From positions 25,048,001 through 25,112,000 of the forward strand of contig NC_135667.1 of assembly GCF_964188315.1 (NCBI RefSeq): 64,000 nucleotides of DNA, given 5' to 3'. The position numbers were made by a program, and so were the translations under genes. Positions within the stretch are counted from its first letter, which is position 1; each line of letters begins with the position of its first letter. Of this stretch, positions 32,371-63,785 are shown piece by piece. The notes under the pieces are model-generated. The model was given only the letters and a program-made list of their open reading frames with translations. It did no database searches and was not told the DNA's origin. This stretch comes from Podarcis muralis. Taxonomy: Eukaryota.

Positions 32371-33826
32371 TTGGGAGAACAGACTACCCCTAATCTTTGC
32401 TTCCAGATCTACAACAATATGTGAGATATGTGAGCAGAATTCCCTGATATAACTCAATAAGCAAGTTGTTTCTTCTACATGCTGGTAGCTTGTAGGAAAG
32501 CCCAGACATGCAAGGATGAGTCATCAATTAACATAACATTGAAACAAAGTCATCAATTAACAAAACATTGAAACAAAGGCTGAATCTAGAAACATAAAAA
32601 AAAAAATGTTTCAGGGAAATGCACTGTAAGCCTCCTAACGGGAAATCACATTGACCAAAGATGGAACCCCACAGTGCCATCTGGTGTCACAGTGCTATAA
32701 CACATTTAAAACACTTTTCTTTCTTTCTTTTTACTAATGTAGCTGATTCCAAAGACTCCATCTTCTTTTTTGCAGCTCTAACTGCACAAGCACCTTTTGC
32801 ACCTAGTACAGTTCTCTGCAAGGCATCTGCAAATGCAAACCTCCACACAACTTATATGCACATTAAACACATATTTTACAAAGAAGATGTCTCTTCTTTT
32901 TCTATCCTGCTAAGTTTAATCAGGAACATTTGATGAAGCACATTTTGAAACTTTAAGTATTATTGTTATTTAAATAAGTACACAATGTTTTATGGATTGC
33001 CTTTGTCTCTATGCTTCTTGACATTCTCAAATAAGCTTAAAGGTTTGTTAAGACAAGTCTTATGCTTGCAGAAGCCATGCTGCCTCTACTTCAGCAAGAC
33101 CTGTCCTTCTATATGCTTGAAAATGCTATTCCCATCCTTGAGTGTGAGCCAGTTCCAGCATCTCTTAGTTCCGGTGCCTCTCAGGTGGGCATCATTGCCA
33201 TTAAAAGAAAACAAGGGAGGCGTTTGTGGTGAGTTCTACCACCTTTTTTTCTAAAAAAATCAGCACTGACAGTAACTATCATATTATGCAAGCTGCATTA
33301 TTACTTTATAATAATCCAAAGAAGCAAAATTGGTCTTTTATATTCAGATGAATCACAACTCCGAAGCTTACAAATTATAATGATTGGAAAATATTTTATT
33401 TAAAATGTTCCAGAGCTTGCATCCTCTATGGGTGTCTGTGATGAACACAAAGTGATGGTTAAGTCCTTTTGAAAAGCAAAAGTTTTCTCATTATTTTCCC
33501 AACATTGTTTTTCATATCTTTGTTACGCAGAGTAAAGATCATTGAGTTCAGCATTGGTGTTAAAAGGCTGTAGAGGACTGAGGCAACCTTGTCTCCTGGA
33601 AATACCTTGAAAGGTCGGTCATAAACAAACATTCCTGGAACAAAGTTTAAGCTCATGACCATGATTTGTGCTGCACAGGTGGAAAGAGCTTTGTTCTTCC
33701 CTTCTGTGACATGTGCTCTAATCTTCACCAAGATGACAGTGTATGACACAAGCAAGATGAAGAAGATCAACGTGAGGAGCAGTCCACTGTTGCAAACCAT
33801 CAGCAACTCTGGGATATACGTGTCAG

Positions 33827-34091
33827 TGTTATGTAGTGTAGTTTCACCCTGGGCCAACAGGGGGATACTGTATATAGTTTTCACTCAGGTCTGTAGATAG
33901 TTTTCACTCAGGTCCGCGGCAGTTATTTTAGGCGGGAACTCTGGACTGTTGTGGTTACAATGTGACAGCCGGCTGCCTATAAATACAGGCCGGCTGAGCT
34001 GTTCACTGTCAGTTCTATTCCAGCTTACCAGAATAAAGAGCTACTTGAAGAAATCGCTGTGCCGGCTGCTATGTCAACCCACGACTTAACA
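33827..34091 (+). repeat. 5' LTR (265 bp)
   Basis: TATAAATA at 33978-85; AATAAA at 34032-37; identical to the 3' LTR except for 24 extra bp. Confidence 0.95.
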
Positions 34092-34092
34092 C

Positions 34093-34110
34093 TGGCGACG
34101 AAGGTGGGAT
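34093..34110 (+). promoter_or_regulatory. Primer-binding site, probably for tRNA-Ser(GCU)
   Basis: TGGCGACGAAGGTGGGAT is complementary (17-18/18 from memory) to the 3' end of vertebrate tRNA-Ser-GCU including CCA. Confidence 0.8.
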
Positions 34111-34286
34111 AGATGGACATCAGAGCACAGCCAGATGCGGCCAGCCTCTGAACTGAGCTGAATCACTGAGCTGAATCACAGAGCGAAATCACTGAGCGAA
34201 ATCACTGGGCAGAACCAGTTCAGAGCTGACTGTTCTGGCTAGAGCACTGTGTTCCATCCATCGCCCTTCACGCCGGCATCGGAATC

Positions 34287-37200
34287 ATGGCTTCACTTGT
34301 GCCTCTACCGCCGTTTGCGCCAGCCTCTGAATCATGGGACTCCTACCTCGCTCGGTTCGACTGCTACCTCCAAGCCAACGAACTGACAGCAGTATCACAG
34401 GATCGGAAGCGGGGCCTATTCCTCAGCCTCTGTGGGCCTGAGGTGTTTGCGACGGCCCGAGCGTTGGTTGCGCCTGAAGCAGTCCAGGCATCACCATGGG
34501 ACACGATCCAAGAGAAGCTCCGCAACCACTACGCACCAAAGCCGTCCAAGATTGCTGCCCGCCATGCGTTCTACCACAGGAACCAGGCAGAGGGGGAGTC
34601 AATCAACAACTACACCACCGCCCTGCGACAGGCTGCAATGCACTGTGAGTTCCGAGACTTAGACGATGCCCTGATGGATCGAATCGTCTGCGGGGTCCGG
34701 GACATCCATCTGCAACGGCGTCTCCTAGCCAAGCCAGACCTCACGCTACAGAAAGCCATTGAGGAGGCTGTGGCCTCAGAAGCTGCTGAACGCTCCGCTC
34801 AGGAGATCCGCAAGTCCAGCAGCCTGCGTCTTGCTAGGGAGCCCGTTCCGGTGCATCATGAAGAGGCCAGCAGTGAGGAGGCATCCTCCAGTGAAGACGA
34901 TGATGTGCACCAGACAAAGCGGGAGCGCAGGAAGTTCCAACAGAAGTCCAAGGGCCAACCGGAATGTGCTGGCTGCGGAGGCAACCATTCCCGTGCCAAG
35001 TGTCGATTCAGAGACGCCATCTGTAGGAGGTGTTCCAGAAGGGGCCACATCGCTAAGGTCTGCCGATCGGCTCCGTCTGACACCCCCCCTTCATCGACTC
35101 GCAAGTCCAAGTCTTCACTCCAGTCTGCCAAGGAAAGTTGTTTCGCTCTCACCAACTGCCGCTGCCCGTCTGGAACCACGATTGGCCAAACCGACTCGCC
35201 TACGAGACGCAAGCTGAACGTCACGGTGCTCATTGAAGGAGCTCCATGTGACATGGAGATCGACACCGGGTCTGCCCTGTCCATCGTGTCATGGAGCACC
35301 ATCAAAAGACTGGTACCCAGAGTGTCCAAAAGGCAACTCGACTCTCACCGCGTACACCTGAGAGACTACCAGGGAAACGACGTTCCCGTGGTAGGCGTTG
35401 GCCGGTTCCGGATCACCTTCAAGGAGTTTTCGGGCCTGCTCCGGTTGGTGGTGGTCGAAGGTCAGCGGCCAAGCCTCCTAGGGCTAGACTGGTTTGATGC
35501 CCTCGGCCTGGAAGTCACCGGCATCAACTGCATCTCTAACGCAGAGACTGAGGGTCTGGTCAAAGACTTTGCCGAGGTTTTTGACGGCACCTTGGGCCAA
35601 TATACAGGTACGCCCATCTCCTTTAGCCTGGATCCACAAGTCGCCCCCATCAAGCTAAAGCCACGCCGGGTTCCCTTTGCTCTCAAGGCTAAGGTGGACG
35701 AACAACTGGACAAACTGATCGCCCAAGGAGTTTTGGAGCCGGTTGACCACGCAAAGTGGGAAACCCCCATCGTCACGCCTGTCAAGCCAGATGGGTCGGT
35801 GAGAATCTGCGCTGACTACAAGTGCACGATCAACAAGGCACTTCAGCAGCACGCTTATCCGGTTCCTGTTGTCCAACACCTGCTGCATTCCCTGGGTGAG
35901 GGTAAGGTCTTCGCTAAGCTGGACCTTGCCCAAGCCTATCAACAACTGCCAGTCGATGATGCCACTGCTGAAGCCCAGACGATCGTCACCCACCGGGGGG
36001 CATTCCGTTGCCGCCGGTTGCAGTTCGGGGTGAGTGTGGCTCCTGGCATCTTCCAAGGCCTTATGGAGCGTCTCCTGCAAGGGCTTCCGGGCGTGGTACC
36101 ATATTTTGATGACGTCTTGGTGTCTGCAGACTCACACCAGCAGCTGTTCGAGCGCCTCCGTGCCGTGCTGACCAGGTTCCAGGAGGCCGGGCTCAAGGTA
36201 AAAAGGGAGAAGTGCCAGATCGCCGTTCCACAGGTAGAGTTCCTGGGCTATCTTATCGATGCCTCCGGTCTTCATCCAACCACATCCAAGATCCGCGCTA
36301 TCCAGCAGGCCCCCACTCCAAAGAACAAAACGGAGTTGCAGGCGTTCCTGGGGCTGCTGAACTTTTATAACATGTTCCTGCCCCACAAAGCCACAGTGGC
36401 TGAGCCTCTTCACCGACTCCTTAGCACTAAGACGCCTTGGGCCTGGGGTCATCGGGAGACGGCGGCCTTCAACGCGGTCAAGGCTCTCCTTTCTTCGGAC
36501 AGTGTGCTGGTACAGTACAGTGAATCCAGGCCACTGGTCCTTGCCTGCGACGCCTCACCTTTTGGCATCGGGGCTGTCCTTAGTCACCGTTTTCCAGATG
36601 GAAGAGAAGCACCGCTCGCCTACTTTTCCAGGACACTATCTCCGACGGAACGGAATTACAGCCAGCTCGACAAGGAGGCATTGGCACTTGTGGCTGGAGT
36701 GAAGAGGTTTCATGAATACCTCTATGGCAGGACTTTTGACCTCATCACTGACCACAAGCCACTCCTGGGCCTCCTCGCCGGTGATCGTCCAACTCCACCG
36801 GTCCTCTCACCACGCATGCTGCGATGGACTGTTTTCCTGGCTGCCTACCACTACCGGCTCATCCACCGCCCGGGGAAATCGATGGGCCATGCCGACGCCC
36901 TCAGCCGTTGCCCTCTTCCAGCATTTGTGGAAGACCCGGCTCCAGCTTCATCGCTCCTTCTGATTGAGGATCTTCCGGCAGCGCCTGTGTCGGCTGCCAC
37001 TGTGGCCTCTGCATCTGCCCAGGATCGCACCATCAGCCGGGTGCTCAACTGGGTGTGGAGGGGGTGGCCACAAGGGCCCTTTGCATCGGAGTTCCAGCCC
37101 TTCGCAACCAGACAACATGAACTCTCAGCTCATCGCGGCTGTCTGCTGTGGGGAGACCGCGTCGTGATTCCCCAGGGACTCCGTCAGCGCGTCCTGGAGG

Positions 37201-38399
37201 CTCTGCACGTTGGCCACCCGGGAATTGTCAAAATGAAGGCGTTGGCTCGGTGTTACGTCTGGTGGCCTAATATGGACGATGCCATCACTGCCTGGGTGTC
37301 CGCCTGTCAAGCGTGCCAGGAGTCGAGGCCTGCACCACCGGCAGCTAAGGGATACACGTGGGAGACGCCAAAGACACCCTGGTCGAGGGTGCACATCGAT
37401 CTGGCTGGCCCCTTTCACGGCCGGACCTTTATGGTAGTGGTGGACGCCTATTCCAAATGGCTGGAGGTCGCCCTGATGCCCTCCACCACTACCGAAGCTG
37501 TCATCCGGGTGCTGCGAGGCCTGTTTGCAACGCATGGGTGTCCTGATGTCCTTGTCTCTGACAACGGCCCGCAGTTCACATCAGGCACGTTTGAGCGGTA
37601 TCTTTTGGGACTGGGCATCCGCCATGCCCTAACGGCACCCTTTCATCCATCCAGCAACGGGCAAGCGGAAAGAATGGTGCGCTCGACAAAAGAGGCACTG
37701 GCGCGCCTGGACCGGGGAGACTGGCATGAGCGGGTCGCCGAATACTTGTTCGCGCAACACATCACCCCTCATGCGGCCACAGGGAGGAGTCCTGCGGAAC
37801 TGCTTATGGGCCGCCGCCTCAGGTCACCGCTCGACCGGCTACACCCAGACTTTGCCGTGGCTGAACCCCCAGGCTGTGCCAACGCACCACGGTCATTTGT
37901 CCCAGGAAACCAGGTCTTTGCCCGGAACTATGTGGGGGACATCCCTTGGGTGCCAGCCACAGTAGTGGGAGTCACTGGACCTCGCTCGTACCAGGTGGCA
38001 CTCGAAGACGGGCGCTTGTGGCGACGGCACATAGACCAACTTAGGCGCAGGGTTGGGGACTTGGACACTACCGAGGTGCCCCCAACTGCGCTTGCGGCTC
38101 CAGAAGAGACACGTACAGATGGCGAGGCTCCACCTACACCTCCCTCGCAAACTGCCAGCGTGGAGCCGAACCAAGCCGTCTCAGAACAGACTCAGACCAC
38201 TCCACTTGCGGAGGCTCCACTCACAGCAGCGGATCCAGGGGAGTTGGTTCCAACGCCACCTAGGGTCGCACCACAGCCTCAGCGAGAACTGTGTGGCCCT
38301 CCGGACTTGGCTACCAGTCCCCGGCGGTCTGGCAGAGTTTCCAAGCGCCCAACTCATTTAAAGGACTATGTTGTTGGACAGGTATCACTGTTGGTCTAA
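34287..38399 (+). CDS. Gag-Pol polyprotein, 1370 aa, single ORF
   Basis: Zinc knuckles CAGCGGNHSRAKC and CRRCSRRGHIAKVC; protease DTGS; RT YFDD; RNase H CDAS/TDH; integrase HVGH..CQAC and D-D-E (IDLAG, SDNG, QAER); C-terminal RRS.R..K.P..LKDYV. Confidence 0.96.
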   Translation: MASLVPLPPFAPASESWDSYLARFDCYLQANELTAVSQDRKRGLFLSLCGPEVFATARALVAPEAVQASPWDTIQEKLRNHYAPKPSKIAARHAFYHRNQAEGESINNYTTALRQAAMHCEFRDLDDALMDRIVCGVRDIHLQRRLLAKPDLTLQKAIEEAVASEAAERSAQEIRKSSSLRLAREPVPVHHEEASSEEASSSEDDDVHQTKRERRKFQQKSKGQPECAGCGGNHSRAKCRFRDAICRRCSRRGHIAKVCRSAPSDTPPSSTRKSKSSLQSAKESCFALTNCRCPSGTTIGQTDSPTRRKLNVTVLIEGAPCDMEIDTGSALSIVSWSTIKRLVPRVSKRQLDSHRVHLRDYQGNDVPVVGVGRFRITFKEFSGLLRLVVVEGQRPSLLGLDWFDALGLEVTGINCISNAETEGLVKDFAEVFDGTLGQYTGTPISFSLDPQVAPIKLKPRRVPFALKAKVDEQLDKLIAQGVLEPVDHAKWETPIVTPVKPDGSVRICADYKCTINKALQQHAYPVPVVQHLLHSLGEGKVFAKLDLAQAYQQLPVDDATAEAQTIVTHRGAFRCRRLQFGVSVAPGIFQGLMERLLQGLPGVVPYFDDVLVSADSHQQLFERLRAVLTRFQEAGLKVKREKCQIAVPQVEFLGYLIDASGLHPTTSKIRAIQQAPTPKNKTELQAFLGLLNFYNMFLPHKATVAEPLHRLLSTKTPWAWGHRETAAFNAVKALLSSDSVLVQYSESRPLVLACDASPFGIGAVLSHRFPDGREAPLAYFSRTLSPTERNYSQLDKEALALVAGVKRFHEYLYGRTFDLITDHKPLLGLLAGDRPTPPVLSPRMLRWTVFLAAYHYRLIHRPGKSMGHADALSRCPLPAFVEDPAPASSLLLIEDLPAAPVSAATVASASAQDRTISRVLNWVWRGWPQGPFASEFQPFATRQHELSAHRGCLLWGDRVVIPQGLRQRVLEALHVGHPGIVKMKALARCYVWWPNMDDAITAWVSACQACQESRPAPPAAKGYTWETPKTPWSRVHIDLAGPFHGRTFMVVVDAYSKWLEVALMPSTTTEAVIRVLRGLFATHGCPDVLVSDNGPQFTSGTFERYLLGLGIRHALTAPFHPSSNGQAERMVRSTKEALARLDRGDWHERVAEYLFAQHITPHAATGRSPAELLMGRRLRSPLDRLHPDFAVAEPPGCANAPRSFVPGNQVFARNYVGDIPWVPATVVGVTGPRSYQVALEDGRLWRRHIDQLRRRVGDLDTTEVPPTALAAPEETRTDGEAPPTPPSQTASVEPNQAVSEQTQTTPLAEAPLTAADPGELVPTPPRVAPQPQRELCGPPDLATSPRRSGRVSKRPTHLKDYVVGQVSLLV

Positions 38400-38500
38400 G
38401 TATGGGAAATGTAACCGATATGCTTTTGTGCCTAATTGAACCATTACGCGTAGTGCTGTATATAAGGAAACCATTACGATTGTAACTAACGCCTTATCTC

Positions 38501-38512
38501 GGTGGGGAGGGG
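38501..38512 (+). promoter_or_regulatory. Polypurine tract
   Basis: ggtggggagggg directly abuts the 3' LTR. Confidence 0.88.
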
Positions 38513-38753
38513 TGTTATGTAGTGTAGTTTCACCCTGGGCCAACACTCAGGTCTGTAGATAGTTTTCACTCAGGTCCGCGGCAGTTATTTTAGGCGGGAA
38601 CTCTGGACTGTTGTGGTTACAATGTGACAGCCGGCTGCCTATAAATACAGGCCGGCTGAGCTGTTCACTGTCAGTTCTATTCCAGCTTACCAGAATAAAG
38701 AGCTACTTGAAGAAATCGCTGTGCCGGCTGCTATGTCAACCCACGACTTAACA
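38513..38753 (+). repeat. 3' LTR (241 bp)
   Basis: Identical to the 5' LTR except that it lacks gggggatactgtatatagttttca. Confidence 0.95.
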
Positions 38754-40617
38754 GTCAGCACATGCCAGTTTGATGAGCTGTGGAATGTCACAGAAGAAAT
38801 TATCCAGGATGTTGGCTTGGCAAAAAGGCAGCTGAATGAGAATTCCAATCTGGATAATGGAGTGAGCAAAGCCACCCAACCATGACCCAGCTACCAAACC
38901 TATGCAAACTTCTCTGTTCATTATAACTAAATATTGCAGTGGCTTGTAGATGGCTATGTATCTGTCCACTGCCATCACCACGAGTAAGAAGACCACAGCA
39001 CCCCCAGTTAAATGGAAGAAGAAGATCTGTGCAATACACCAATTGTAGGAGATGGTATGAGTATGGGAGAAGAGGTCCCATAATATTTTCAGTGATGTGA
39101 CTGTTGATTCACTGATGTCTATGACAGCCAAGTTGGCTAGCAAAAAGTACATGGGCGTATGCAGGCTGGGGGTGGTGATCACAGTGACTATAATGGTGAG
39201 ATTTCCCAACCAAGTTGTGCTGTAGACAGTGAGGAAAAGGAGGAAGAGAAGGGACTGTATTCTGGGATTCTGCGAGAAGCCCAGGAGGACAAATTCTGTT
39301 ACTGCTGTGCTGTTCTTCTCCATGTGAGCATCCTACTGAGGCTCACTAAGGACCACTAAAAGTCATGTCATCAAATTACTTCTTCAAACAACTCTTGACA
39401 TACCCATTACAGGTCCCCCACTGTATGCTATGAAATTGCTTATGAGTTTCAGCATTATGTTGTACTAGGAGAAACTGGGGAATCAAAACACAGGGGAGAT
39501 CAAGGTTCAATATGTGATTTATTCAACAGAGGCTCAGCTAATGTCATGAGATAAGCTGAGTCAGGGGCACAGTCCACAAGATTTGGTTTATAAAATCTAA
39601 ATGAATAAGTGTCAATGAAAATAAATAAATACTCCTGATGCCAACGGAATTGTTGTTCATCCACACATCCAGGGACTTGGAACCCTAACAATAAATAAAA
39701 CAAAATAAATGTGATTTTTAAACAAATATAATGTTAATAAGATGTACAAACCGATTTGATAAAGTCAAAGTAGGAACCTGTGCAAAATAATTTCAAGAAG
39801 CAAGAGGAGTGTCTTTGATTCAGACATATAGTGGTTTGGAACCCTACAAACAGTAATAATGATTGGGAAAACTATATTAGTAACACTATAGTGGAGCTTG
39901 CAGAGCTCTCTATTCACCTCTCTGATGAACACATAATAATTTAATAATAATTTATTATTGACACCCCGCCCTTCTGGCTGGGTTTCCCAGTAATGGTGAC
40001 AGTGTCATCCTTTTGGAAATTAGTGTTATCATCATGCATGTAAAATATGCAATAATGATTCAGATCAACTAAATCTGACATAAAAACATCACATGATTAG
40101 TTCAATTTTCAGAAAGATGATATTTTAAGTTTACTTAGTCATTCATGCAAAAAGTCCAGAAGATGTTTTCCAATCCAATCCAATAAATGTCAATAATTAT
40201 TAAGCACATTTACTTTTCTTGCTGCTTTGAAGATATCACAGAAATAGTAAATAACACATAAACAAAGAAATACATATAGGTCAAACTAGGGTCACTTTAT
40301 TTATTTATACCATAAAAACCGCTGCAAAGGAAACACTATTGGTTCGGGAGCAAACCAGAACCTGAAAGAAACTTTAGCTTAGGGCAAAAAAAAAACCCTG
40401 ATGCAAGAACTGGAGGCTTTACTATCCAGCCTTCATCCCATTCCTAGGCCACACCAAGAAGGTGAAGAAGTTAATGTTGTTTGTTATTATTTACTACTTA
40501 TATGCTGAGTGTGTTGGTCCCCCCCCCATAAATGTTACGTTAGATGATATATTAATGTATTGTATGATTCCCCATTCCTTTTCCTCCTTCTCTTATGGTA
40601 TTTTTGTGTCTGTGTGT

Positions 40618-41867: not shown

Positions 41868-42833
41868 CTATGTCTTTCTTTCATGAACACACAGTGATGG
41901 TTTTGTCCTTTCAGAAAGCAGAAAATTTCTTGTGAGCTTTCTAATTGTGTTTTTCATCTCAGTGTTACGCAGAGTAAAGATCATTGAGTTCAGCATTGGT
42001 GTTAAAAGGCTGTAGAGGACTGAGGCAACCTTGTCTCCTGGAAATACCTTGAAAGGTCGGTCATAAACAAACATTCCTGGAACAAAGTTTAAGCTCATGA
42101 CCATGATTTGTGCTGCACAGGTGGAAAGAGCTTTGTTCTTCCCTTCTGTGACATGTGCTCTAATCTTCACCAAGATGACAGTGTATGACACAAGCAAGAT
42201 GAAGAAGATCAACGTGAGGAGCAGTCCACTGTTGCAAACCATCAGCAACTCTGGGATATACGTATCAGCACATGCCAGTTTGATGAGCTGTGGAATGTCA
42301 CAGAAGAAATTATCCAGGATGTTGGATTGGCAGAAAGGCAGCTGAATGAGAATTCCAATCTGGACAATGGAGTGAGCAAAGCCACCCAACCATGACCCAG
42401 CTACCAAACCTATGCAAACTTCTCTGTTCATTATAACTAAATATCTCAGTGGCTTGTAGATGGCTATGTACCGGTCGACTGCCATCGCCACGAGTAAGAA
42501 GACCACAGCACCCCCAGTTAAATGGATGAAGAAGATCTGTGCAATGCACCAATTGTAAGAAATGGTATTTGTATGGAAGAATAGGTCCCACAACATTTTC
42601 AGTGATGTGACTGATGATTCACTGATGTCTATGACAGCCAGGTTGGCTAATAGAAAATACATGGGTGTGTGAAGGTTGGGTGTTCTGATAACGCTGATTA
42701 TAATGGTGAGGTTTCCAATCCATGTTGTGCTGTAGACAGTGAGGAAAAGGAAGAAGAGAACAGACTGTACTCTTGGATTCTGAGAAAGCCCCAGGAGGAT
42801 AAATCCTGTCACTGCTGTGCTGTTGTTTTCCAT
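41868..42833 (-). CDS. Olfactory receptor, OR4D5-like, intact, 321 aa
   Basis: Likely start MENNSTAV at 42833, after acceptor cattcaacag|gttgctcacATG; the ORF-track extension to 42938 is intronic; motifs LHTPMY, MAVDRY, KALSTCAAQ, PMLNSMIF. Confidence 0.9.
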   Translation of the reverse strand: MENNSTAVTGFILLGLSQNPRVQSVLFFLFLTVYSTTWIGNLTIIISVIRTPNLHTPMYFLLANLAVIDISESSVTSLKMLWDLFFHTNTISYNWCIAQIFFIHLTGGAVVFLLVAMAVDRYIAIYKPLRYLVIMNREVCIGLVAGSWLGGFAHSIVQIGILIQLPFCQSNILDNFFCDIPQLIKLACADTYIPELLMVCNSGLLLTLIFFILLVSYTVILVKIRAHVTEGKNKALSTCAAQIMVMSLNFVPGMFVYDRPFKVFPGDKVASVLYSLLTPMLNSMIFTLRNTEMKNTIRKLTRNFLLSERTKPSLCVHERKT

Positions 42834-47239: not shown

Positions 47240-48187
47240 TCATTTTGATTCAGTTATTTTGAATAACATATTATTCCCAACCAGTTTTCTAATGCTGTTT
47301 TTCATTTCTGTGTTCCTCAGAGTGAAGATTATTGGATTTAGCACTGGAGTGATTGCAGTGTACAAGACCGAGGTTATTTTGTCCACTGGAGATACCTGGA
47401 AAGGGCGGTCATAAATGAACATTGCTGGAACAAAATGTAAGCTCATTACTATGACCTGTGCAGAACATGTAGAAAGGGCTTTGTGCTTCCCTTCTGTGAC
47501 ATGCATTCTAATCTTCACCAAAATCATAGTATATGATACAAGTAAGATAAAAAAGATCAGTGTGAGAAGCAGTCCACTGTTACAAACCATCAGTATTTCT
47601 GTAATGTATGTGTCTGTGCAAGCCAGTTTGATTACTTGCGGAACATCACAGTAAAAGTTGTCCAAAATGTTGGGCCCACAGAATGGTAACTGAAGTACCA
47701 GTGCTACCTGGACAATAGAGTGAGCAAAGCCACCCAACCATGTTCCAATAACCAAGCCTATGCAAGCTCCTTGGTTCATAATAAGTAAATATCGCAGTGG
47801 TTTATAGATAGCTATGTACCTGTCAACAGCCATAACAACTAGGAAGAAGACCACAGCACCTCCAGTGCAATGGAAGAAGAACATTTGGGCGATGCACCAG
47901 TTGTAGGAGATGGAATTTGTATGAGAGATGAGGTCCCACAGCATTTTGAGTGCAGTTACTGTGCAATCACTGATGTCTATCACAGCCAGGTTGCATAAAA
48001 AAAAGTACATAGGTGTGTGGAGGTGGGGTGTGTAAATCACTGTAATTATAATGGTGAGGTTCCCAAGCCAGGTTATGATGTACATTGTGAGAAAGATAAA
48101 GAAGAGAATGGACTGAACCTTTGCACTCTGAGAGAAACCCAAGAGAATGAATTCTGTCACTGTTGTATTATACTTCTTCAGAGCCAT
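47240..48187 (-). CDS. Olfactory receptor, OR4D5-like, intact, 315 aa
   Basis: LHTPMY, MAVDRY, DNFYCDVPQ, KALSTCSAQ, PVLNPIIFTLRN; acceptor ttcctttgcag 20 nt before the ATG. Confidence 0.93.
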   Translation of the reverse strand: MALKKYNTTVTEFILLGFSQSAKVQSILFFIFLTMYIITWLGNLTIIITVIYTPHLHTPMYFFLCNLAVIDISDCTVTALKMLWDLISHTNSISYNWCIAQMFFFHCTGGAVVFFLVVMAVDRYIAIYKPLRYLLIMNQGACIGLVIGTWLGGFAHSIVQVALVLQLPFCGPNILDNFYCDVPQVIKLACTDTYITEILMVCNSGLLLTLIFFILLVSYTMILVKIRMHVTEGKHKALSTCSAQVIVMSLHFVPAMFIYDRPFQVSPVDKITSVLYTAITPVLNPIIFTLRNTEMKNSIRKLVGNNMLFKITESK

Positions 48188-56107: not shown

Positions 56108-57012
56108 TTAATAACTCTTTTTTTCAATTAGGACCTTTCTTGTGTTCAGATCAGATCTTAGAACAATGATGTAGCATTTTGGAAGAAATATGCAAAGTAA
56201 GAGGCCAGTGTTGGAGGCCAAGATGGCAAAAACTTCCACAGCCACTATGTATTTCCCCTTGGTGCTCAGGTAACCTGGAATGAAGGAGATCCAAACACTG
56301 CAAAACACCAGCATGCTGAAAGTGATGAACTTGGCTTCATTGAATGTATCTGGCAGTTTCCTGGCCAGGAAGGCTACTGTGAAGCTGATCATGGCCAGAA
56401 AGCCCAAGTAGCCCAAGACACAGTAGAACATGGTGATAGAACCTTCATTACATTCCAATATAATATGTCCAGCCTGTGAGTGCGTGTCAGCTTTGGGGAA
56501 GGGAGGAGAAGTTAACAGCCACACAATGCAAATACCCACTTGAATGAGCGAGCAAAAAAGAACAATGGAGGTGGCTACTTTCTGCCCTAGCCATTTCCTC
56601 ATGCTGTTGCCTGGCTTTGTGGCCAGGAAGGCCAGGACCACCATGGTGGTTTTTGCCAACACACAAGAAACTACAACAGAGAAAATGATGCCAAATGCTG
56701 TTTGCCGGAGCAAGCAGCCCAGCTTCCCAGGCTTGCCAATGAAGAGAAGGGAAGAAAGGTAGCAAAGCAAGATGGAGGCAAGCAGAACACAGGTGAGGTT
56801 CCGGTTGTTGGCTTTGACAATAGGGGTAGTCCAGTTTTTTAGAAAAATGTGCATTACCAAAACTGTTAATGCAGCAAAAAAGATAGCAAGGACAACCAAG
56901 ACAATGCCCAAGGGCTCGTGATAGGCAAGGAAGCTCAGAACCTTTTGAATACATTTGTTTTTGTTCCTATTTGGATATTGATCTTCTGGGCATTTTAGAC
57001 AATGAACTGCAT
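56108..57012 (-). CDS. Vomeronasal type-2 receptor (class C GPCR), exon 6 (7TM domain)
   Basis: Acceptor ccctttcag|at gca; motifs [34 protein letters not shown]; ends at a stop codon. Confidence 0.95.
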
Positions 57013-57369
57013 CTGAAAGGGACCAAGAAAGTGTCAGTAGGTGTTCCAATTGTTATACCTTTATTAGTTTGCATAAAGTTGAAGGCGTGTCAATTTAATG
57101 CTAGATAATAATGACTCCCCGTTTCACAACTAACTGAAAGAAGATGCTTCCAGTCCAAGTTATACAAACTTTGGCTAGTGGTAAGTCCACAAAACATATT
57201 AAAATTTTATTCTGAATATCCATGGATAGGATAGAACTTTTAGTCACTAGTGGGCATAAGTGTACCTAAATATGTGTGGTCAATTTCTTTGAAGATATTT
57301 TCCTTTTGTGTACATATTTAATTGCACTCAGCTCATGTAATTATAGAATTCAGTTTATAGTATTGTAGA

Positions 57370-57673
57370 GAGAGAAAGAACCTTGAGGATCATCTAGCCC
57401 AACCCCCTGCAATGCAGGAATCTCAGCTAAAGCATCCATGACAGATGACCAACCAATCTCTGCATAAAAACCTCCAAGGAACGAGAGTCCACCACCTCCC
57501 AAGAGAGTTCATTCCACTGTCAGACAGCTTGTTTAGCTGGAATCTCTTTTCGTGTAACTCGAAGACATTGGTTTGGGTACTACCCTCTGGGAAAGGAGAA
57601 AACAACATTGCTGCTGCTTCCATGTTACAGACCTTTAGATATTTGAAGTTGGCTATTGTATCTCCTCTCAGTC
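57370..57673 (-). mobile_element. CR1 LINE 3' end
   Basis: Translation RLRGDTIANFKYLK...PEGSTQTN...RFQLN matches the CR1 ORF2 C-terminus; tail gggggttgggctagatgatcc. Confidence 0.85.
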
Positions 57674-57687
57674 TGTATATCACCTAC

Positions 57688-57814
57688 CTGTCTCATTAGA
57701 AAACATGTCTTCTGGGCATGGATTACAGCCATAACAACAACTTGGTTTGCCTTCTTGAACCATCCTTTGCTGTCCATGGTGACAGCTCTCAACACACCTA
57801 GAACTTGGTGGTAA
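57688..57814 (-). CDS. V2R exon 5 (cysteine-rich domain), 127 bp
   Basis: cattag|LPPSSRCVESCHHGQQRMVQEGKPSCCYGCNPCPEDMFSNET G|gtaggt; phase 0 to 1; found by manual translation, not in the ORF track. Confidence 0.93.
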
Positions 57815-58509
57815 CTAATGATTAGAAAACAGATATTATGTCACATCCAAATTTTCATACAAATACAGCTATATTTCTATTCTACCTGATAACCCAATAA
57901 CTTCTTGCTCTGATCAGCTGAATAATTATTTAAAGTCATTGACAATACATTTTCAGGGGAAATATCAGTGGGGATGGACAAACAACCACCAATGGCTCAG
58001 GGATTTATATGATGATTGAAGAGTAATTTCAGGAGGATGGGCAAATTTTGGGGTTTCTTGCAGTCTCAACTACAATAGAGTGTTCGTGTACACAGTCATG
58101 TTTTCACACTGCACTTGACTCTGAGAGCAACAGGACATCATCAAGTCCCGTTGCTCTATTTAAGGCACACAGAAGAAAGAAGCCCAGCACACTCATGGCT
58201 ACTATGAGCAAGTGGGTAGAAACAAATAATCATAATAAAAGTACAAGGCAAGTGAAGAAGCTCGTGGACTAGCTCATAAAGGGACTCGTGGGTCTGCAGA
58301 TTTATAGGATTCATGATCTGTTTTGGTTCATGATCCACCCAGATCAGCTGAGTCCACTTTGAAATCCAAGTTCTGTGGGTTTCTGCTCTGTCCCTACTTC
58401 CAAGAACATTAATCTTACCTCTAAGATCCATGGGCAACAGTGCTGCAGCATCTGGACAGTAACATGTATTTATTCAGTTGTGACTATAAGCTGCTAAGTA
58501 TTTTCCTAC

Positions 58510-58722
58510 CTGTTTAAGTCTGTCGTTCCACACAACATCTATCCCAGTGAGGGTGAACTCATGGTTTGGGGAAATACTTGCAAACTTGGGTTTAATGGCA
58601 GAGAAATTGGGGTAAATGATCCAGTTGATGATATCATAGCCAGCCGAAACTTCTCCATATTCAATCAATACTTCATGCCCTGCACCATTGTTAAAATGGA
58701 TGTTTTTCAGTATGGAATTCAG
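58510..58722 (-). CDS. V2R exon 4, 213 bp
   Basis: ttccaattcag|LNSILKNIHFNNGAG...GYDIINW...WNDRLKQ|gtagga. Confidence 0.92.
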
Positions 58723-59071
58723 CTGAATTGGAAGAAAATAGAAGAAACAAATTCTGAAATTGTCCATTATTTATTTTGCAATTCTGTCTTGGGAGCAAGT
58801 CTCATTGAACTCAACAGGACTTATATCTGCATAGACAGATAGAACATATTGAAAGAGCAACCAGAACCCTGCAGGATTTATGACTTAGATCAACAGCTGT
58901 TGCACAAAGGCATCAAGCCTACAGGGTGCTGCGTCAAGGAAGGGATAACAGGCAGGAAGGAAGGAAAGTCAGGGCTCCTACCTTCTCTTGAGAAGATTCA
59001 GCCAGTGGTCAGGTAGGTTTTGGCTTTTCCACTGGTTTTTCCACTTATTCCCTCCCTCCCTCCCTCCCTCC

Positions 59072-59110
<39 letters not shown>

Positions 59111-59545
59111 TTTGATAATCTATCCCCCCGCCCCGACAGCCCTAGATCTTTCTGGCCCATCCAACCTAATCTACAGTGGTTTGTGGCTGTCACAAACCAA
59201 CTCAACCAGTGCCTACAAATAGACACAATTTGGCTCAGGGATCAGCCAAATCCAATACATAGTAGGAATAAATCTTCATTCCTTTATGCCTTAATAGTTC
59301 TGTTCCCTTTTCAGGAAACGGCATCTTAAGAGAGCCAGTGTGGTGTAGTGGTTAAGAGCAGTAGACTCGTAATCTGGTGAACCAGGTTTGATTCCCTGCT
59401 CCTCCACATGCAGCTGCTGGGTGACCTTGGGCTAGTCACACTTCTCTGAAGTCTCTCAGCCTCACTCACCTCAAAGAGTGTTTATTGTGTGGGAGGAAGG
59501 GAAAGGAGATTGATAGCCGCTTTGAGACTCCTTAGGATAGTGATA

Positions 59546-59905
59546 GGGACGCAGGTGGCACTATGGGTTAAACCACAGAGCTTAGGACTTGCCAATCAGA
59601 AGGTCAGCGGTTCGAATCCCAGTGACGGGGTGAGCTCCCGTTGCTCGGTCCCTGCTCCTGCCAACCTAGCAGTTTGAAAGCACGTCAAAGTTCAAGTAGA
59701 TAAATAGTTACCGCTCCGGTGGGAAGGTAAACGGTGTTTCCTGCTCTGGTTCACCAGAAGCGGCTTAGTCATGCTGGCCACATGACCCGGAAGCTGTAGG
59801 CCGGCTCCCTCGGCCAATAAAGTGAGATGAGTGCCGCAACCCCAGAGTCGGTCACAACTGGACCTAATGGTCAGGGGTCCCTTTACCTTTACCTTTACCT
59901 TTATA
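59546..59905 (+). mobile_element. Full-length Sauria SINE
   Basis: GGGACGC head, GGTTCGAATCC B box, (ACCTTT)n tail; TSD ggatagtgata / gggtagtgata. Confidence 0.92.
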
Positions 59906-60262
59906 AAAAGGTAAAGGTACCCCTGCCCGTACGGGCCAGTCTTGACAGACTCTAGGGTTGTGCGCTCATCTCACTCTATAGGCCGGGAGCCAGCGCTGTC
60001 CGCAGACACTTCCGGGTCACGTGGCCAGCGTGACAAGCTGCATCTGGGGAGCCAGCGCAGCACACGGAACACCGTTTACCTTCCCGCTGGTAAGCGGTCC
60101 CTATTTATCTACTTGCACCTGGGGGTGCTTTCGAACTGCTAGGTTGGCAGGCGCTGGGACCGAGCGATGGGAGCGCACCCCGCCGCAGGGATTCGAACCA
60201 CCGACCATGCGATCGGCAAGTCCTAGGCGCTGAGGTTTTACCCACAGCGCCACCCACATCCC
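59906..60262 (-). mobile_element. Full-length Sauria SINE, second subfamily, inserted in the tail of the preceding one
   Basis: TSD ttacctttata at 59895-905 and 60265-275. Confidence 0.92.
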
Positions 60263-60512
60263 AGTTACCTTTATAGGGTAGTGATAAAGCAGGATACCAA
60301 ATCCAAACTCCTCCTCCTCCTCTTCTTCTTTTTCTTCAAAGTTTACTGTGCACATGAATACAGCATAGCAGACTTCCCTAATTCTCTTATAAACTCACCA
60401 GCATGCAAAACATTGACATATTTGTTCATTTGTATTTGATTCTCTAAGTAAACAGTTTTCCTCATTAGACATCATGTCAAGCTCATAGACTTTATTATGG
60501 CAATGTATTTAC

Positions 60513-61340
60513 CTGCCATGATGGACTATTCAGCTGTTCAATTCTGTCTCTTCTTGGTCTTGACTCATAGATGGCATGTAAAGCATGGGCTACAGCATAG
60601 ACAGCATTGTAGATACCATAGGTCTCACCAGTCATATCCATATCAAATGTATACTCAGACAGATATTCCAGTTTCTCTTTGCCTGTGCACATATTACTTT
60701 GTGAATAGCGTGAAAAGCTGTCTTCATAAAAATAACAAATGAAAGCAGTTGACCAGAAATCCATGAAAAAGCGAATCACTGGCTTATCAGACATAAAGCT
60801 CCCAAGAAACTCATGGAAACCTGGCACAGGCTTTTTGTGGACTGAAAAAGAAAAAGCACCACTGTACGTTTCCGGAGGTGTTACAAATAAACCAATATGC
60901 TGTTTGAAATCCCACCGAGCAGTTATGATCCAAACTTTCCCAGGATTGATCTCCCAATTTTGTCCCATGAGGTTTTGTAATCCACACATCGAATTATAGT
61001 CTCCACTGACTATTACCACATTTATCTCACTTAAGAAAAGTTCTGTATATAACTTTGACATATAGTTGCGATAAGTTTCATGCCACACATATTTTGATTC
61101 TCCTACTTTATACTGGTGGGCAACACAAATGCCATACTGCAGAAGCAGAGATGTCAGGATCTGACCAAAGCTTTCTCCATCATCATCATTTGAAACAATG
61201 AGCCCAACCCATGTCCATCTGAAAAGGAAAAGTAGCTGAGTAATTCCAATGGGTTGAAGAGTTTCTCTTGGTGACATTCGATACAAAAATGGGAAATTTG
61301 TTGTACCTCTAAGTGTAGACTCATACGCACCATAGTTAAA
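60513..61340 (-). CDS. V2R exon 3 (ligand-binding domain), 828 bp
   Basis: tttctccatcag|FNYG...FPFLYRM...WTWVGL...KVWI...YNAVYAVAHALH...SWQ|gtaaat; open frame. Confidence 0.93.
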
Positions 61341-61776
61341 CTGATGGAGAAAAAACAGTGCTGATGAGAGCAAAGAAATAGCACATGTCTGAGCTGTTGT
61401 TGGGAGCTCCTAGAATCTAATTATACTATTAACTTTCAATATATGAAATGCATAATTTCCCCCCACTGCATAACTAATATTAGCAAGTAATGTTGGCATA
61501 ATACTTCCCAGCCAGCATAATCATGAAGTGGTGCAAACTTAAATTTCTGCAAAAAAATATATTAAAAAGTTTCAATGCTTTAGACAAAAGGAATGGATTA
61601 AGTGTGGACTCCCACACATACTCACTGGGGAGTTAGCCCCCTTGAACTCAATAAGACTTGCTTCTATAAAGACATGGGTTTGCATTTTAGGATCGAGTGT
61701 GGGTGGGTAATTTCAACTTTCTCCTCCCAAACCAAGACAAAGTGTATAGCCTTAATTTATTTTAATTACATGTTGT

Positions 61777-61812
61777 GATAGCTCAGTCAGTAGAGCATGA
61801 GACTCTTATTCT
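61777..61812 (+). other. tRNA-Lys-like 5' fragment (probably a SINE head)
   Basis: gatagctcagtcagtagagcatgagactctta matches the D-arm and anticodon stem of tRNA-Lys(CUU); no T-arm follows. Confidence 0.55.
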
Positions 61813-62499
61813 ATGTTTAATAATTCTTTATATTAAATTTCCATGTTCTGAGATTACAGAGGTGAATTCAATTAGCTCAGTGGTTAACTACCCCATCTCT
61901 TTTATTGATCAACACCCCGTTCTCATGTCACAGCACAGGAAGGAGTGTTTCTTATCTGAATTTTTGTTGATGATGTTACTGTCTCTCCATGAAATGGGGG
62001 TTGAGGAAATGATAGTGATTTTACTAATTATAGAGTTCGTGAACAGTTCCTGGTGTGAGAACTGTATGTCTATGTAATAAAAAAAAGCCATGTTGGTAAC
62101 ACCTGCTCCCTACTATGAAAAGTTATATCCTTTGAAACATCTGTGTATTACAAGTGCGTAGAACTAGCGAACCTTTAAAGGCTGCTGGACTCCAGCCCAC
62201 ATCTGTTCTAGCCAGGTATTGGCTAGATGTAGTCTAATCGGTTGGAAGTAGGACACACATTTTGGAGGTTCCACTCCTACCAGCTGGACTGCTACCAATG
62301 AATAGGCATTCAAGACTTTTATTTGGACTCTTGTGTTTATGCAGTGATGTCAAGCAAACATTCAATTTTATTTCCCATGCTACTTTAATCTATTCTATAT
62401 GAAACCCGGGCATCATCTGGAGACTTAGTGTGAAGTATTCCTAATGTGTGGGTGACACCGAATTCTATCTTTTCATATTATATGATTCAGGAGGCCTTG

Positions 62500-62600
62500 C
62501 AAGTGCAAGAATAGTGTCTGGAGGCCCTGATGGGCTGCCTGAGGGCCAATAAATTGAAGCTGAATACTGATAGATCACAAGCTTTGTGGATAAGTGGTTT
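62500..62600 (+). mobile_element. L2-clade LINE RT fragment
   Basis: Translation CLEALMGCLRANKLKLNTDRSQALW resembles CLxxVxxWMxxNKLKLNPDKTEVLW. Confidence 0.7.
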
Positions 62601-62846
62601 TAGGTCCAAAAACAAGACTGACACCATTCCCCACCCCAGAGCCCAGGAATTTAAGAATCTATTAGTCTTCCTTAATTTACCATGTCCTTCATTATATTGA
62701 CATTATTGCTGGCCATGGATCATTTTATGGCAGTACGCAAGATGCTTTATAATGAAATTCTTATCTGGTTTATTAGCAATTTAATGCATAGTTTAAAATA
62801 CAGTACCATTGATGAACACTCTTCCATTGTTAACAATACATTTCTA

Positions 62847-63785
62847 TTAGGTCTTGTTCAATACATTCCTTCCCAAAGCTCTCATTAATGCCTCTTTGAC
62901 TTCCTTGTTCCTGAAACTATATATAATGGGATTTAGCATAGGATTGATTACTGCATAAAATATAGAAATCATTTTATCATTCTCAGGGGAGTAAAATGAT
63001 TTTGGCCTCATGTACATGAACATTCCTGTGCCATAATAGATGGTCACTACTGTTAGATGGGAAGAGCATGTGGAAAAAGCTTTGTGTCTGCCACTAGTGG
63101 TACGGATTCTGATGATAGCAGCAATGATGTAGCCGTAGGACACCAGAACCAGGATAAAGGGCAGCATTAAAGTGCCTGCACCCCCTATCAACATCAGAAG
63201 TTCATTTAAGGTGGTATCAGTACAGATCATGTGCAGCAGAATGGGAGCCTCACAGAAAACGTGATTAATAACATAGGGTCCACAAAGAGGGGGCAAAGAT
63301 AAGTAGAGTGGAACCACAGAGAGTAGAAAACTGATGGTCCAAGATGCTGCTGCAGTCTTCACACAAACACGGTAGCTCATTATTGTGGTGTAACGCAAGG
63401 GATGGCACACTGCTACATAGCGGTCAAATGCCATCACTGCTAGAAGGAGACATTCTGCTGCTCCCATAAAGAGGGAGATATAGGTTTGCAGCATGCACAG
63501 ATGATATGATATAGTTTTCTTGGTGGATATCAGGTTGGCCAACATTTTGGGGACCACAGCAGTGGTGTAGCAAAGGTTCAGAAATGCCAAGTGTTGAAGG
63601 AAAAAATACATGGGAGTATGCAGATGGGGATCTGCTGTGGCCAAGCAAATTATACTAATGTTCCCAAGAAGGGTTGCAGCATATAGAAAGAAGAAGATTG
63701 CAAAGAGTAAAGGTTCCATTTCTGGATGATTAGAAAAACCCAAAAGCATGAATTCCCAAACTTCTGTTTCATTTGTTGGTCTCAT
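62847..63785 (-). CDS. Olfactory receptor, OR2/OR13-like, intact, 312 aa
   Basis: Likely start MRPTNETEV at 63785, downstream of acceptor ctcttctcccag; LHTPMYFFL, MAFDRYVAVC, KAFSTCSSH, PMLNPIIYSFRN. Confidence 0.93.
   Translation of the reverse strand: MRPTNETEVWEFMLLGFSNHPEMEPLLFAIFFFLYAATLLGNISIICLATADPHLHTPMYFFLQHLAFLNLCYTTAVVPKMLANLISTKKTISYHLCMLQTYISLFMGAAECLLLAVMAFDRYVAVCHPLRYTTIMSYRVCVKTAAASWTISFLLSVVPLYLSLPPLCGPYVINHVFCEAPILLHMICTDTTLNELLMLIGGAGTLMLPFILVLVSYGYIIAAIIRIRTTSGRHKAFSTCSSHLTVVTIYYGTGMFMYMRPKSFYSPENDKMISIFYAVINPMLNPIIYSFRNKEVKEALMRALGRNVLNKT

What the first reader, a model, noticed from the sequence alone, without database searches (positions are those of the whole stretch)
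33822..38758. Complete, potentially active Mag-type Gypsy retrotransposon that recently knocked out an OR gene
Seen: one uninterrupted 1370-aa gag-pol ORF with all catalytic motifs, PBS, PPT, a perfect 5-bp TSD, and LTRs with zero substitutions. The element sits antisense inside an OR coding region whose two halves have no other lesion and rejoin in frame. Known: LTRs are identical at integration. Inference: the insertion is very young, may be polymorphic in the population, and the family may still be mobile. That would make it a natural insertional null allele of a chemoreceptor.
Basis: partly seen in the sequence, partly recalled or inferred. Interest (0 to 1): 0.78.

Follow-up and report, generated by a model that had tools for sequence, protein, structure and literature searches.

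The report
Young Gypsy retrotransposon splitting lizard smell-receptor gene
A complete 4.9-kb jumping gene from a family of roughly 150-200 copies that is transcribed in Podarcis wall lizards sits inside one olfactory receptor gene and splits it cleanly; related lizards keep that gene whole, so this is a recent and fairly ordinary natural knock-out.

Summary
A 4,927-bp Ty3/Gypsy element (33827-38753) lies between perfect GTCAG target duplications. It has TG..CA LTRs, a PBS, a PPT and one 1,370-aa gag-pol ORF with all catalytic motifs. The LTRs show 0 substitutions over 241 bp but are not identical: the 3' LTR lacks 24 bp.

The element lies antisense at the codon 190/191 boundary of an OR4D-like receptor gene. 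The two halves (190 + 120 codons) are free of stops and rejoin in frame.

The host is a Podarcis wall lizard. Intact 310-aa orthologues exist in P. muralis, P. raffonei and Lacerta agilis, so the insertion is lineage- or haplotype-specific.

The family is large, close-knit and transcribed:
- It forms a 90% protein cluster of 121 members, including many full-length copies about 98.8% identical to this one.
- Contig depth suggests about 160-200 copies.
- It gives sense-strand RNA-seq reads along its whole length.

Polymorphism is indicated but not proven. Uninterrupted junction contigs occur in three resequenced animals, but a 97%-identical paralogue 3 kb away confounds them. Short LTRs only bound the age to under about 2.6-7.8 My.

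The architecture matches Mag elements; no reference phylogeny could be run. Verdict: real, a new member of a known kind, of modest interest.

The parts
33822..33826 (.). Left target-site duplication GTCAG
   Evidence: Read directly; identical to 38754-38758
33827..34091 (+). 5' LTR, 265 bp. Termini TGTTA...TAACA, TATAAATA at 33978-33985, AATAAA at 34032-34037, 23-bp tandem duplication at 33868-33914. Carries 24 bp (33858-33881) that the 3' LTR lacks
34093..34109 (+). Primer-binding site TGGCGACGAAGGTGGGA, one base after the LTR
   Evidence: Read directly. The assignment to tRNA-Ser is from memory only
34152..34207 (+). 13-bp tandem repeat (4.3 copies) in the 5' leader
   Evidence: Copy-number variation among family members: the 34135->34176 skip
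34287..38399 (+). Single gag-pol ORF of 1,370 aa: gag, two CCHC knuckles, protease DTG, RT YFDD, RNase H, integrase H2C2 + DDE + GPY/F, then a proline-rich tail. No chromodomain, no env
38501..38512 (+). Polypurine tract GGTGGGGAGGGG directly before the 3' LTR
   Evidence: Read directly
38513..38753 (+). 3' LTR, 241 bp. 0 substitutions against the 5' LTR; copy-specific 24-bp deletion
   Evidence: RNA reads from other copies carry the 24 bp after the PPT (joints 38529->33844 and 38511->33826)
38754..38758 (.). Right target-site duplication GTCAG
38754..39323 (-). N-terminal half of the olfactory receptor gene, codons 1-190 (TM1-TM4, ending KLACAD)
33459..33821 (-). C-terminal half of the same gene, codons 191-310 plus stop (begins TYIPELL)
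41868..42833 (-). Intact 321-aa paralogue. Identical to the disrupted gene over 33521-33821, and 96.6% identical over 38755-39016. It confounds read-based genotyping

Best explanation
A full-length Ty3/Gypsy LTR retrotransposon with Mag-like architecture integrated antisense into the single coding exon of an OR4D-like olfactory receptor gene in a Podarcis wall lizard.

It has one fused gag-pol ORF, LTRs of 241-265 bp and a total length of 4,927 bp. Integrase cut the target at the boundary of codons 190 and 191 and duplicated GTCAG. The receptor is now split after TM4 and can at best give a 191-aa truncated product, so this is an insertional null allele.

The insertion happened after this lineage or haplotype separated from P. 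muralis and P. raffonei. It came from a family of roughly 160-200 close copies that is still transcribed in sense orientation.

Shown: the anatomy, the in-frame split, the intact orthologues elsewhere, the copy-rich family and the family-level RNA.

Inferred: the recent date, the segregating status within the species, and the continued mobility of the family.
For: - Anatomy and TSD.
- OR halves: Pfam 7tm_4 and a frame-exact rejoin, and gapless alignment to paralogues and orthologues.
- Host: lacertid, genus Podarcis.
- Intact 310-aa orthologues: P. muralis XP_028560182.1 with 10 differences, P. raffonei XP_053215918.1 with 8, L. agilis XP_033024485.1 with 16. The consecutive P. muralis accessions mirror the gene order in the window.
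- Family size: a 90% protein cluster of 121 members, including seven 1,370-aa P. muralis proteins 98.3-98.9% identical to this ORF.
- Copy number: per-contig k-mer depth of element-internal contigs is 160-200 times that of the single-copy flank in three WGS runs (table 8).
- Transcription: stranded RNA-seq reads cover the whole element, 4-5 times more on the sense side, with none in the OR flanks (table 2).
- Resequenced animals: in three animals from three studies the only contigs leaving 33821 run straight into the N-half. None carries this haplotype's letters at 38816, 38823, 38855 or 38935 (tables 3, 5, 8).
- Best empty-allele candidate: the X13 contig has the target GTCAG once and this locus's own letters at 38936-38977.
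- Architecture: it matches published vertebrate Mag elements of 4.7-4.8 kb, LTRs of 208-211 bp and a fused gag-pol of 1,330-1,365 aa (PMC11117352).
Against: - The uninterrupted contigs in X1 and X5 carry 8 and 9 of the 9 diagnostic letters of the paralogue at 42265-42528. They may be the paralogue, or collapsed mosaics of both loci.
- No filled-junction contig was listed either, so no independent data confirm the junctions.
- Logan contigs drop rare variants, and a human-likeness filter may hide OR sequence.
- RNA reads show fixed differences from this copy, so this copy itself is not shown to be expressed. Some reads run from the LTR into other flanks, which points to host read-through.
- 0/241 LTR substitutions allow several million years.
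- The LTRs differ by a 24-bp indel.
- The disrupted allele has 5-6 private amino-acid changes, so it may already have been decaying.
- It is inferred, not shown, that the sequenced runs come from the window's species. The left flank is identical at 0-1 differences in about 200 bp.
Confidence: 0.8

Rival explanations
1. The insertion is older and fixed in this species. The identical LTRs reflect their short length, or LTR-LTR gene conversion, and not recency. The uninterrupted contigs are simply the neighbouring paralogue.
For: - The 95% upper age bound from 0/241 is 2.6-7.8 My.
- X1 and X5 contigs carry the paralogue's letters.
- The disrupted allele has 4 private SNPs in the 262 bp next to the insertion and 5-6 private amino-acid changes, as expected of a pseudogene of some age.
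- One indel separates the LTRs.
Against: - The gag-pol ORF of 4.1 kb is intact.
- P. muralis and P. raffonei orthologues are intact.
- The X13 contig has this locus's own letters on both sides of an empty GTCAG site.
- In X1 the uninterrupted contig has twice the single-copy depth, as if both loci were uninterrupted.
- X1 and X13 show no graph branch at 33821.
- If the 4 private SNPs had arisen after insertion, about 7 LTR differences would be expected and 0 are seen.
Confidence: 0.15
2. The receptor allele was already non-functional or under relaxed constraint before the element landed. On this reading the insertion marks a decaying gene and did not knock out a working one.
For: - The allele has private replacements not seen in any orthologue or paralogue: R130Q in the conserved PLRY after DRY, V157I, S170A and TE291-292KD.
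- In the 262 bp beside the insertion, 3 of 4 private SNPs are non-synonymous, close to the neutral ratio.
- These changes most likely predate the insertion, given 0 LTR substitutions.
Against: - There is no stop or frameshift in 930 bp.
- The odd NSMIF in place of NPxxY, and AAQ in place of ASH, are shared with intact orthologues and paralogues, so they are features of the subfamily.
- Five changes is a small sample.
- Orthologues in four species keep the ORF.
Confidence: 0.3
3. The element was placed inside the OR gene by an assembly error, for example a repeat-induced misjoin.
For: No independent read or contig was seen to bridge flank and LTR. The family has more than 150 near-identical copies, which complicates assembly.
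Against: A misjoin would not produce a perfect 5-bp duplication of the target, exact TG..CA ends, and two gene halves that rejoin to the codon. The junction anatomy is that of integrase.
Confidence: 0.03

Closest known systems
Vertebrate Mag-family Ty3/Gypsy elements (Jule of Xiphophorus; Mag1/Mag2 of Takifugu, PMC11117352)
   Same: - gag and pol fused in one ORF: 1,370 aa here against 1,330-1,365 aa.
- Small size: 4.93 kb against 4.7-4.8 kb.
- Short LTRs: 241-265 bp against 208-211 bp.
- Domain order PR-RT-RH-IN, with no env and no chromodomain.
- Young insertion ages.
   Different: - The host is a lacertid lizard.
- Only about 53-55% amino-acid identity to the fish relatives found.
- Far higher copy number (about 160-200) than the 3-4 copies I recall for Jule (memory, not checked).
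Insect and nematode Mag lineage (Mag of Bombyx mori, mosquito Mag-like families, PMC3286476)
   Same: The PBS starts with TGG and, from memory, fits tRNA-Ser; Mag-like PBSs are reported as tRNA-Ser or tRNA-Leu. Tandem repeats in the 5' leader are reported for some Mag-like elements and are present here (34152-34207).
   Different: Distant in sequence: about 52% identity to the insect hits. The tRNA assignment was not tested against a lizard tRNA.
'K02A2.6-like' / 'Gypsy retrotransposon integrase-like protein 1' gene models of squamate genomes
   Same: These are copies of the same and sister families, annotated as host genes. The P. muralis models A0A670I4V1 and others are 98.3-98.9% identical to this ORF. 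Colubrid snake elements are the sister group at 64-71% identity.
   Different: They are automatic annotations without element boundaries. Here the complete element, with LTRs, PBS, PPT and TSD, and its insertion site are defined.
Segregating olfactory-receptor pseudogenes and transposon-insertion polymorphisms
   Same: One member of a large tandem OR cluster is inactivated in some genomes and intact in close relatives.
   Different: The cause here is a full-length LTR retrotransposon and not a point mutation. Segregation within the species is indicated but not proven.

Membership tests
Ty3/Gypsy (Metaviridae) LTR retrotransposon | Direct LTRs with TG..CA ends, flanked by a short target-site duplication | tested here: met
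   LTRs at 33827-34091 and 38513-38753 with termini TGTTA..TAACA; 5-bp TSD GTCAG
Ty3/Gypsy (Metaviridae) LTR retrotransposon | pol domain order protease - RT - RNase H - integrase | tested here: met
   Pfam hits in that order: 312-402, 500-655, 720-854, 961-1121. Catalytic residues confirmed
Ty3/Gypsy (Metaviridae) LTR retrotransposon | PBS next to the 5' LTR and a polypurine tract next to the 3' LTR | tested here: met
   TGGCGACGAAGGTGGGA at 34093-34109; GGTGGGGAGGGG at 38501-38512
Mag lineage of Ty3/Gypsy | gag and pol fused in a single ORF; compact element (about 4.3-4.9 kb) with LTRs of 200-300 bp (PMC11117352) | tested here: met
   One 1,370-aa ORF, 4,927 bp, LTRs of 241 and 265 bp
Mag lineage of Ty3/Gypsy | No env gene and no integrase chromodomain | tested here: met
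   No further ORF between the pol stop (38399) and the PPT. No chromo or env Pfam hit. The C-terminal 130 aa are proline-rich
Mag lineage of Ty3/Gypsy | PBS complementary to tRNA-Ser or tRNA-Leu (PMC3286476) | tested here: inconclusive
   The PBS reads as the complement of a ...ATCCCACCTTCGTCGCCA 3' end, which from memory is 17/18 to vertebrate tRNA-Ser(GCU). There is no tRNA gene in the window and no lizard tRNA at hand
Mag lineage of Ty3/Gypsy | RT/pol phylogeny groups it with the reference elements Mag, SURL and Jule, away from chromoviruses, Gmr, CsRn1, Barthez and Osvaldo | not testable with these tools
   No reference sequences could be fetched. The tree of session hits only shows kinship with unnamed squamate, frog, fish, tick, nematode and insect elements
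Vertebrate olfactory receptor (Pfam 7tm_4), OR4D-like | Single-exon 7TM receptor of about 310 aa matching the OR profile end to end | tested here: met
   The halves match 7tm_4 at profile positions 2-161 and 180-277. Together they are 310 codons. They are 95-97% identical to intact 310-aa 'olfactory receptor 4D1-like' proteins
Vertebrate olfactory receptor (Pfam 7tm_4), OR4D-like | Conserved OR motifs (MAYDRY, KAFSTC, PMLNPxIY) | tested here: inconclusive
   MAVDRYIAI and KALSTC are present. NPxxY reads NSMIF, but this is shared with the intact paralogue and with the L. agilis orthologue. PLRY reads PLQY only in this allele
Transposon insertion polymorphism (segregating allele) | Filled and empty alleles of the same locus both seen within one species | tested here: inconclusive
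   Uninterrupted junction contigs occur in 3 of 3 WGS runs. Two carry the paralogue's letters and one (X13) carries this locus's letters. No filled junction was seen outside the window, and the species of the runs is coded

The most novel reading that the evidence does not exclude
The insertion is a segregating null allele of a chemoreceptor, caused by a Gypsy family that is still transposing in the germline of Podarcis wall lizards. That would give a natural system for studying live non-retroviral LTR retrotransposition and its population genetics in an amniote. In addition, the wider clade has moved between ticks and lizards: a Rhipicephalus element nests inside the squamate clade.
Probability: 0.45. 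Interest if true: 0.45.

Novelty: new member of a known kind. Interest (0 to 1): 0.3.

Why it matters
Mammals and birds have lost active Gypsy elements, whereas squamates are known to keep young ones. This copy adds a fully delimited element from a family of about 160-200 copies that is transcribed in Podarcis, a genus widely used in evolutionary genetics. It also gives a clean example of such an element inactivating a chemoreceptor gene that close relatives keep intact.

Practically, the locus could serve as a presence/absence marker and as a natural OR null. It also shows that this family is annotated as dozens of 'host genes' in lizard genome annotations. None of this changes current understanding, so the value is descriptive.

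Tried and rejected
I could not fetch orthologous DNA to align the empty site in L. agilis, Z. vivipara, P. muralis or P. raffonei, or to compute dN/dS. The orthologue evidence is therefore at protein level only.
- The 'skips 4932' contigs first looked like direct proof of an empty allele. One search showed that their differences from the window are exactly the letters of the paralogue at 42265-42528 (9/9 in X5, 8/9 in X1). I downgraded them. Only the X13 mosaic contig (GTCAG once, this locus's letters at 38936-38977) remains as a candidate.
- Depth ratios against the single-copy flank (2.1x in X1, 1.6x in X5, 1.5x in X13) are suggestive but too noisy to call genotypes.
- The original Jule paper (PMID 11158369) and Bowen & McDonald 1999 (PMID 10523521) are not held.
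- A paper search for 'K02A2.6' gave no clade assignment.
- Our-findings searches gave no other copy of this family.
- The exact gag-pol sequence is not in the protein collection.
- I did not search or fold a joined OR model. The two halves were searched apart by reference, and the in-frame rejoin was checked by coordinate arithmetic only.
- The large profile search, structure prediction and complex prediction were not needed.
Full report
**What is there**

The window is a 36-44% GC tandem cluster of single-exon olfactory receptor (OR) genes plus a V2R fragment. At 33822-38758 lies a 57-60% GC block with the full anatomy of an LTR retrotransposon:
- GTCAG at 33822-33826 and again at 38754-38758.
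- A 5' LTR at 33827-34091 and a 3' LTR at 38513-38753, with termini TGTTA...TAACA.
- A TATA box (33978-33985) and an AATAAA signal (34032-34037) inside the LTR.
- A PBS one base after the 5' LTR (34093-34109).
- A 13-bp tandem repeat in the leader (34152-34207).
- One ORF of 1,370 codons (34287-38399).
- A polypurine tract (38501-38512) abutting the 3' LTR.

Pfam finds protease, RVT_1, RNase H, Integrase_H2C2 and rve in that order, plus a weak gag match. Two CCHC knuckles, DTG, YFDD, the RNase H DAS motif and the integrase D1038, D1092 and E1128 are all in place. There is no env gene and no chromodomain.

**One correction to the observation**

The LTRs have no substitution over 241 aligned bases, but they are not identical. 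The 5' LTR is 265 bp and the 3' LTR is 241 bp, and the difference is 24 bp at 33858-33881. RNA reads from other family copies run from the PPT through the start of the LTR into this 24-bp segment (joints 38529->33844 and 38511->33826, and the loose end at 38529). The longer form is therefore the family's usual one, and the 3' LTR of this copy carries a private deletion.

**The interrupted gene**

On the minus strand, 39323..38754 encodes 190 residues ending KLACAD. 33821..33459 encodes 120 residues starting TYIPELL, followed by a stop. 570 nt is exactly 190 codons, so once one TSD copy is removed the halves join in frame to 310 codons. I checked this by coordinates and by aligning the halves separately; I did not search a joined model.

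Pfam 7tm_4 covers profile positions 2-161 and 180-277 in the two halves. The halves align without gaps to neighbouring ORs. The unusual NSMIF (for NPxxY) and STCAAQ motifs are shared with the intact paralogue at 41868-42833 and with orthologues, so they belong to the subfamily and are not damage.

**Host and orthologues**

An OR at 47240-48187 is found exactly in an NCBI genome on a 59.6-Mb sequence. It clusters with Podarcis, Lacerta and Zootoca proteins.

Searching the N-half alone found intact 'olfactory receptor 4D1-like' proteins. Their cluster holds 310-aa proteins of P. muralis (XP_028560182.1) and P. raffonei (XP_053215918.1), next to the 321-aa orthologues of the paralogue. The window's own paralogue is also in that cluster.

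The 310-aa proteins differ from the two halves at 10 and 8 positions respectively. L. agilis XP_033024485.1 differs at 16 positions and shares the same C-terminal end. All of them read straight through KLACAD|TYIPELL. The insertion is therefore absent from the annotated genes of at least three related species. The window comes from a Podarcis genome that is neither of those two references.

**The family**

The ORF is 98.8% identical (1354/1370) to a P. muralis protein that represents a 90% cluster of 121 sequences. Seven listed members are full-length 1,370-aa proteins, 98.3-98.9% identical to this copy. P. lilfordi models are about 94% identical.

In three whole-genome runs from three studies, element-internal contigs that match this copy perfectly have k-mer depths of 1,435-7,628, against 8.9-43.3 for the single-copy left flank. 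That suggests roughly 160-200 copies (table 8). This is a rough figure.

A 2026 stranded RNA-seq run gives reads along the whole element, 4-5 times more with the first mate on the minus strand. By the usual library convention this means sense transcripts. There are no reads in the OR flanks (table 2). Nearly all of these reads carry fixed differences from this copy, so other copies are the source. Some reads run from LTR ends into unrelated flanks, so part of the signal is read-through.

Six further small run assemblies, which the tool guesses to be RNA, hold 62-67% of the sampled words. That is about what the element alone would give. I count this as weak support.

**Is it polymorphic?**

Each of the three DNA runs has a contig that joins 33821/33822 to 38754/38755, skipping 4,932 bases (table 5). 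I compared these contigs with the intact paralogue 3 kb away:
- The paralogue is identical to the disrupted gene over 33521-33821.
- Over 38755-39016 it differs at only nine sites.
- Those nine sites are exactly where the contigs differ from the window: 9 of 9 in X5 and 8 of 9 in X1.
- Those two contigs also show only 4 shared junction letters, which fits the paralogue's ATCAG.

They are therefore the paralogue, or collapsed mosaics of both loci.

The X13 contig is different. It has all five TSD letters once (GTCAG). It has this locus's own letters at 38936, 38961, 38963, 38967 and 38977. At 38816, 38823, 38855 and 38935 it has the letters seen in the paralogue; three of these four encode S170, V157 and R130, the residues found in every orthologue. 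It is the best candidate for a true empty allele.

Two further points go the same way:
- In all three runs no contig carries the window's letters at those four sites. Such letters must follow the right junction on the filled haplotype.
- In X1 and X13 the assembly path does not branch at 33821.

Against this, contigs drop minor variants, a human-likeness filter may remove OR sequence, and no filled junction was listed anywhere. I put within-species polymorphism, or privacy to the assembled haplotype, at about 60-65%. That the runs come from the same species is itself an inference, drawn from a left flank with 0-1 differences in about 200 bp.

**Age**

With 0 differences in 241 bp, the 95% upper bound is 7.8, 6.2 or 2.6 My for rates of 0.8, 1.0 or 2.4 x 10^-9 per site per year. 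The rates are assumed values. Short LTRs cannot show 'very young' by themselves.

The intact 4.1-kb ORF and the absence of the insertion from congeners support youth. So does the tract shared with the paralogue, which spans the insertion site with a single mismatch in about 360 bp.

**State of the allele before the insertion**

The disrupted allele has replacements found in no orthologue: Q130 in PLRY, I157, A170 and K291-D292. It also has N233, which it shares with the window's own paralogue and so may have come by gene conversion. Next to the insertion, 4 private SNPs lie in 262 bp, and 3 of them are non-synonymous. Had they arisen after the insertion, about seven LTR differences would be expected, and none is seen. 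They most likely predate it or came by gene conversion. The gene may therefore have been under relaxed constraint on this haplotype already. 'Knocked out a working receptor' is plausible but not shown.

**Classification**

The architecture matches published vertebrate Mag elements, which have a fused gag-pol of 1,330-1,365 aa, a length of 4.7-4.8 kb and LTRs of about 210 bp (PMC11117352). Mag-like PBSs are reported as tRNA-Ser or tRNA-Leu, and some Mag-like elements have leader tandem repeats (PMC3286476). My reading of the PBS as tRNA-Ser(GCU) is from memory and was not tested.

Gmr-type elements, the other group with a fused ORF, are over 6 kb and over 1,500 aa. A tree with the named references could not be built.

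In a tree of session hits, the Podarcis family is sister to colubrid snake elements (SH-aLRT support 100), then to gecko elements. Frog, fish, tick, nematode and insect relatives lie further out.

**Verdict**

The feature is real and well formed: a young, lineage-specific insertion from a copy-rich, transcribed family, which inactivates one OR in a large cluster. It is a new member of a known kind. Young Gypsy elements in squamates and OR pseudogenisation are both familiar. Interest is modest.

The earlier notes of this scan on other DNA of this genome described a different young Gypsy family.

Noticed in passing
proteins P0158, P0163, P0189, P0177, P0193: A Rhipicephalus microplus (hard tick) gag-pol, from a 90% cluster of 41 members, nests inside the squamate clade as sister to Zootoca/Lacerta elements (SH-aLRT 99; the squamate clade including it has support 100). 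Ornithodoros and Trichinella elements sit just outside. This is a candidate for horizontal transfer of a Mag-like Gypsy between ticks and lizards. It rests on a quick tree of 31 sequences only.
   Followed up: partly
window 33827-33893: In three WGS runs, the depth bin 33744-33940, which holds the start of the LTR, has about 5-10 times the summed k-mer depth of the rest of the element. Contigs diverge after 33893 into CATATGCAAATAAGG.... This stretch seems to be shared with a much more abundant repeat. No other copy of it occurs in the window.
   Followed up: partly
window 33521-33821 and 41963-42263: The disrupted OR and its intact paralogue share 301 identical bases. Identity continues on the other side of the insertion up to 38815, with a single mismatch at the first TSD base. 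The C-terminal tails (33463-33520) differ at 19 of 58 bases. This looks like a recent gene-conversion tract spanning the insertion site.
   Followed up: partly
window 34001-38000: The element is 57-60% GC inside a 36-44% GC gene cluster. I did not pursue an explanation.
   Followed up: no
window 38816-38936, 33515-33520: The disrupted OR allele carries amino-acid replacements seen in no orthologue or paralogue (R130Q in PLRY, V157I, S170A, TE291-292KD). Gene-tree signals conflict between neighbouring ORs: the 315-aa OR is closest to P. muralis, while the disrupted OR and its paralogue are closest to P. raffonei. This is consistent with sorting or introgression among Podarcis.
   Followed up: partly
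protein cluster of P0127: Dozens of copies of this retrotransposon are annotated in P. muralis, P. lilfordi and other squamate genomes as host genes ('Gypsy retrotransposon integrase-like protein 1', 'uncharacterized protein K02A2.6-like'). One relative is fused to an FKBP15 model in a snake (P0175).
   Followed up: no
window 56108-63881: A V2R-type 7tm_3 ORF (56108-57049) lies among the OR genes on the same strand. This was already noted by another first-stage finding and I did not examine it.
   Followed up: no
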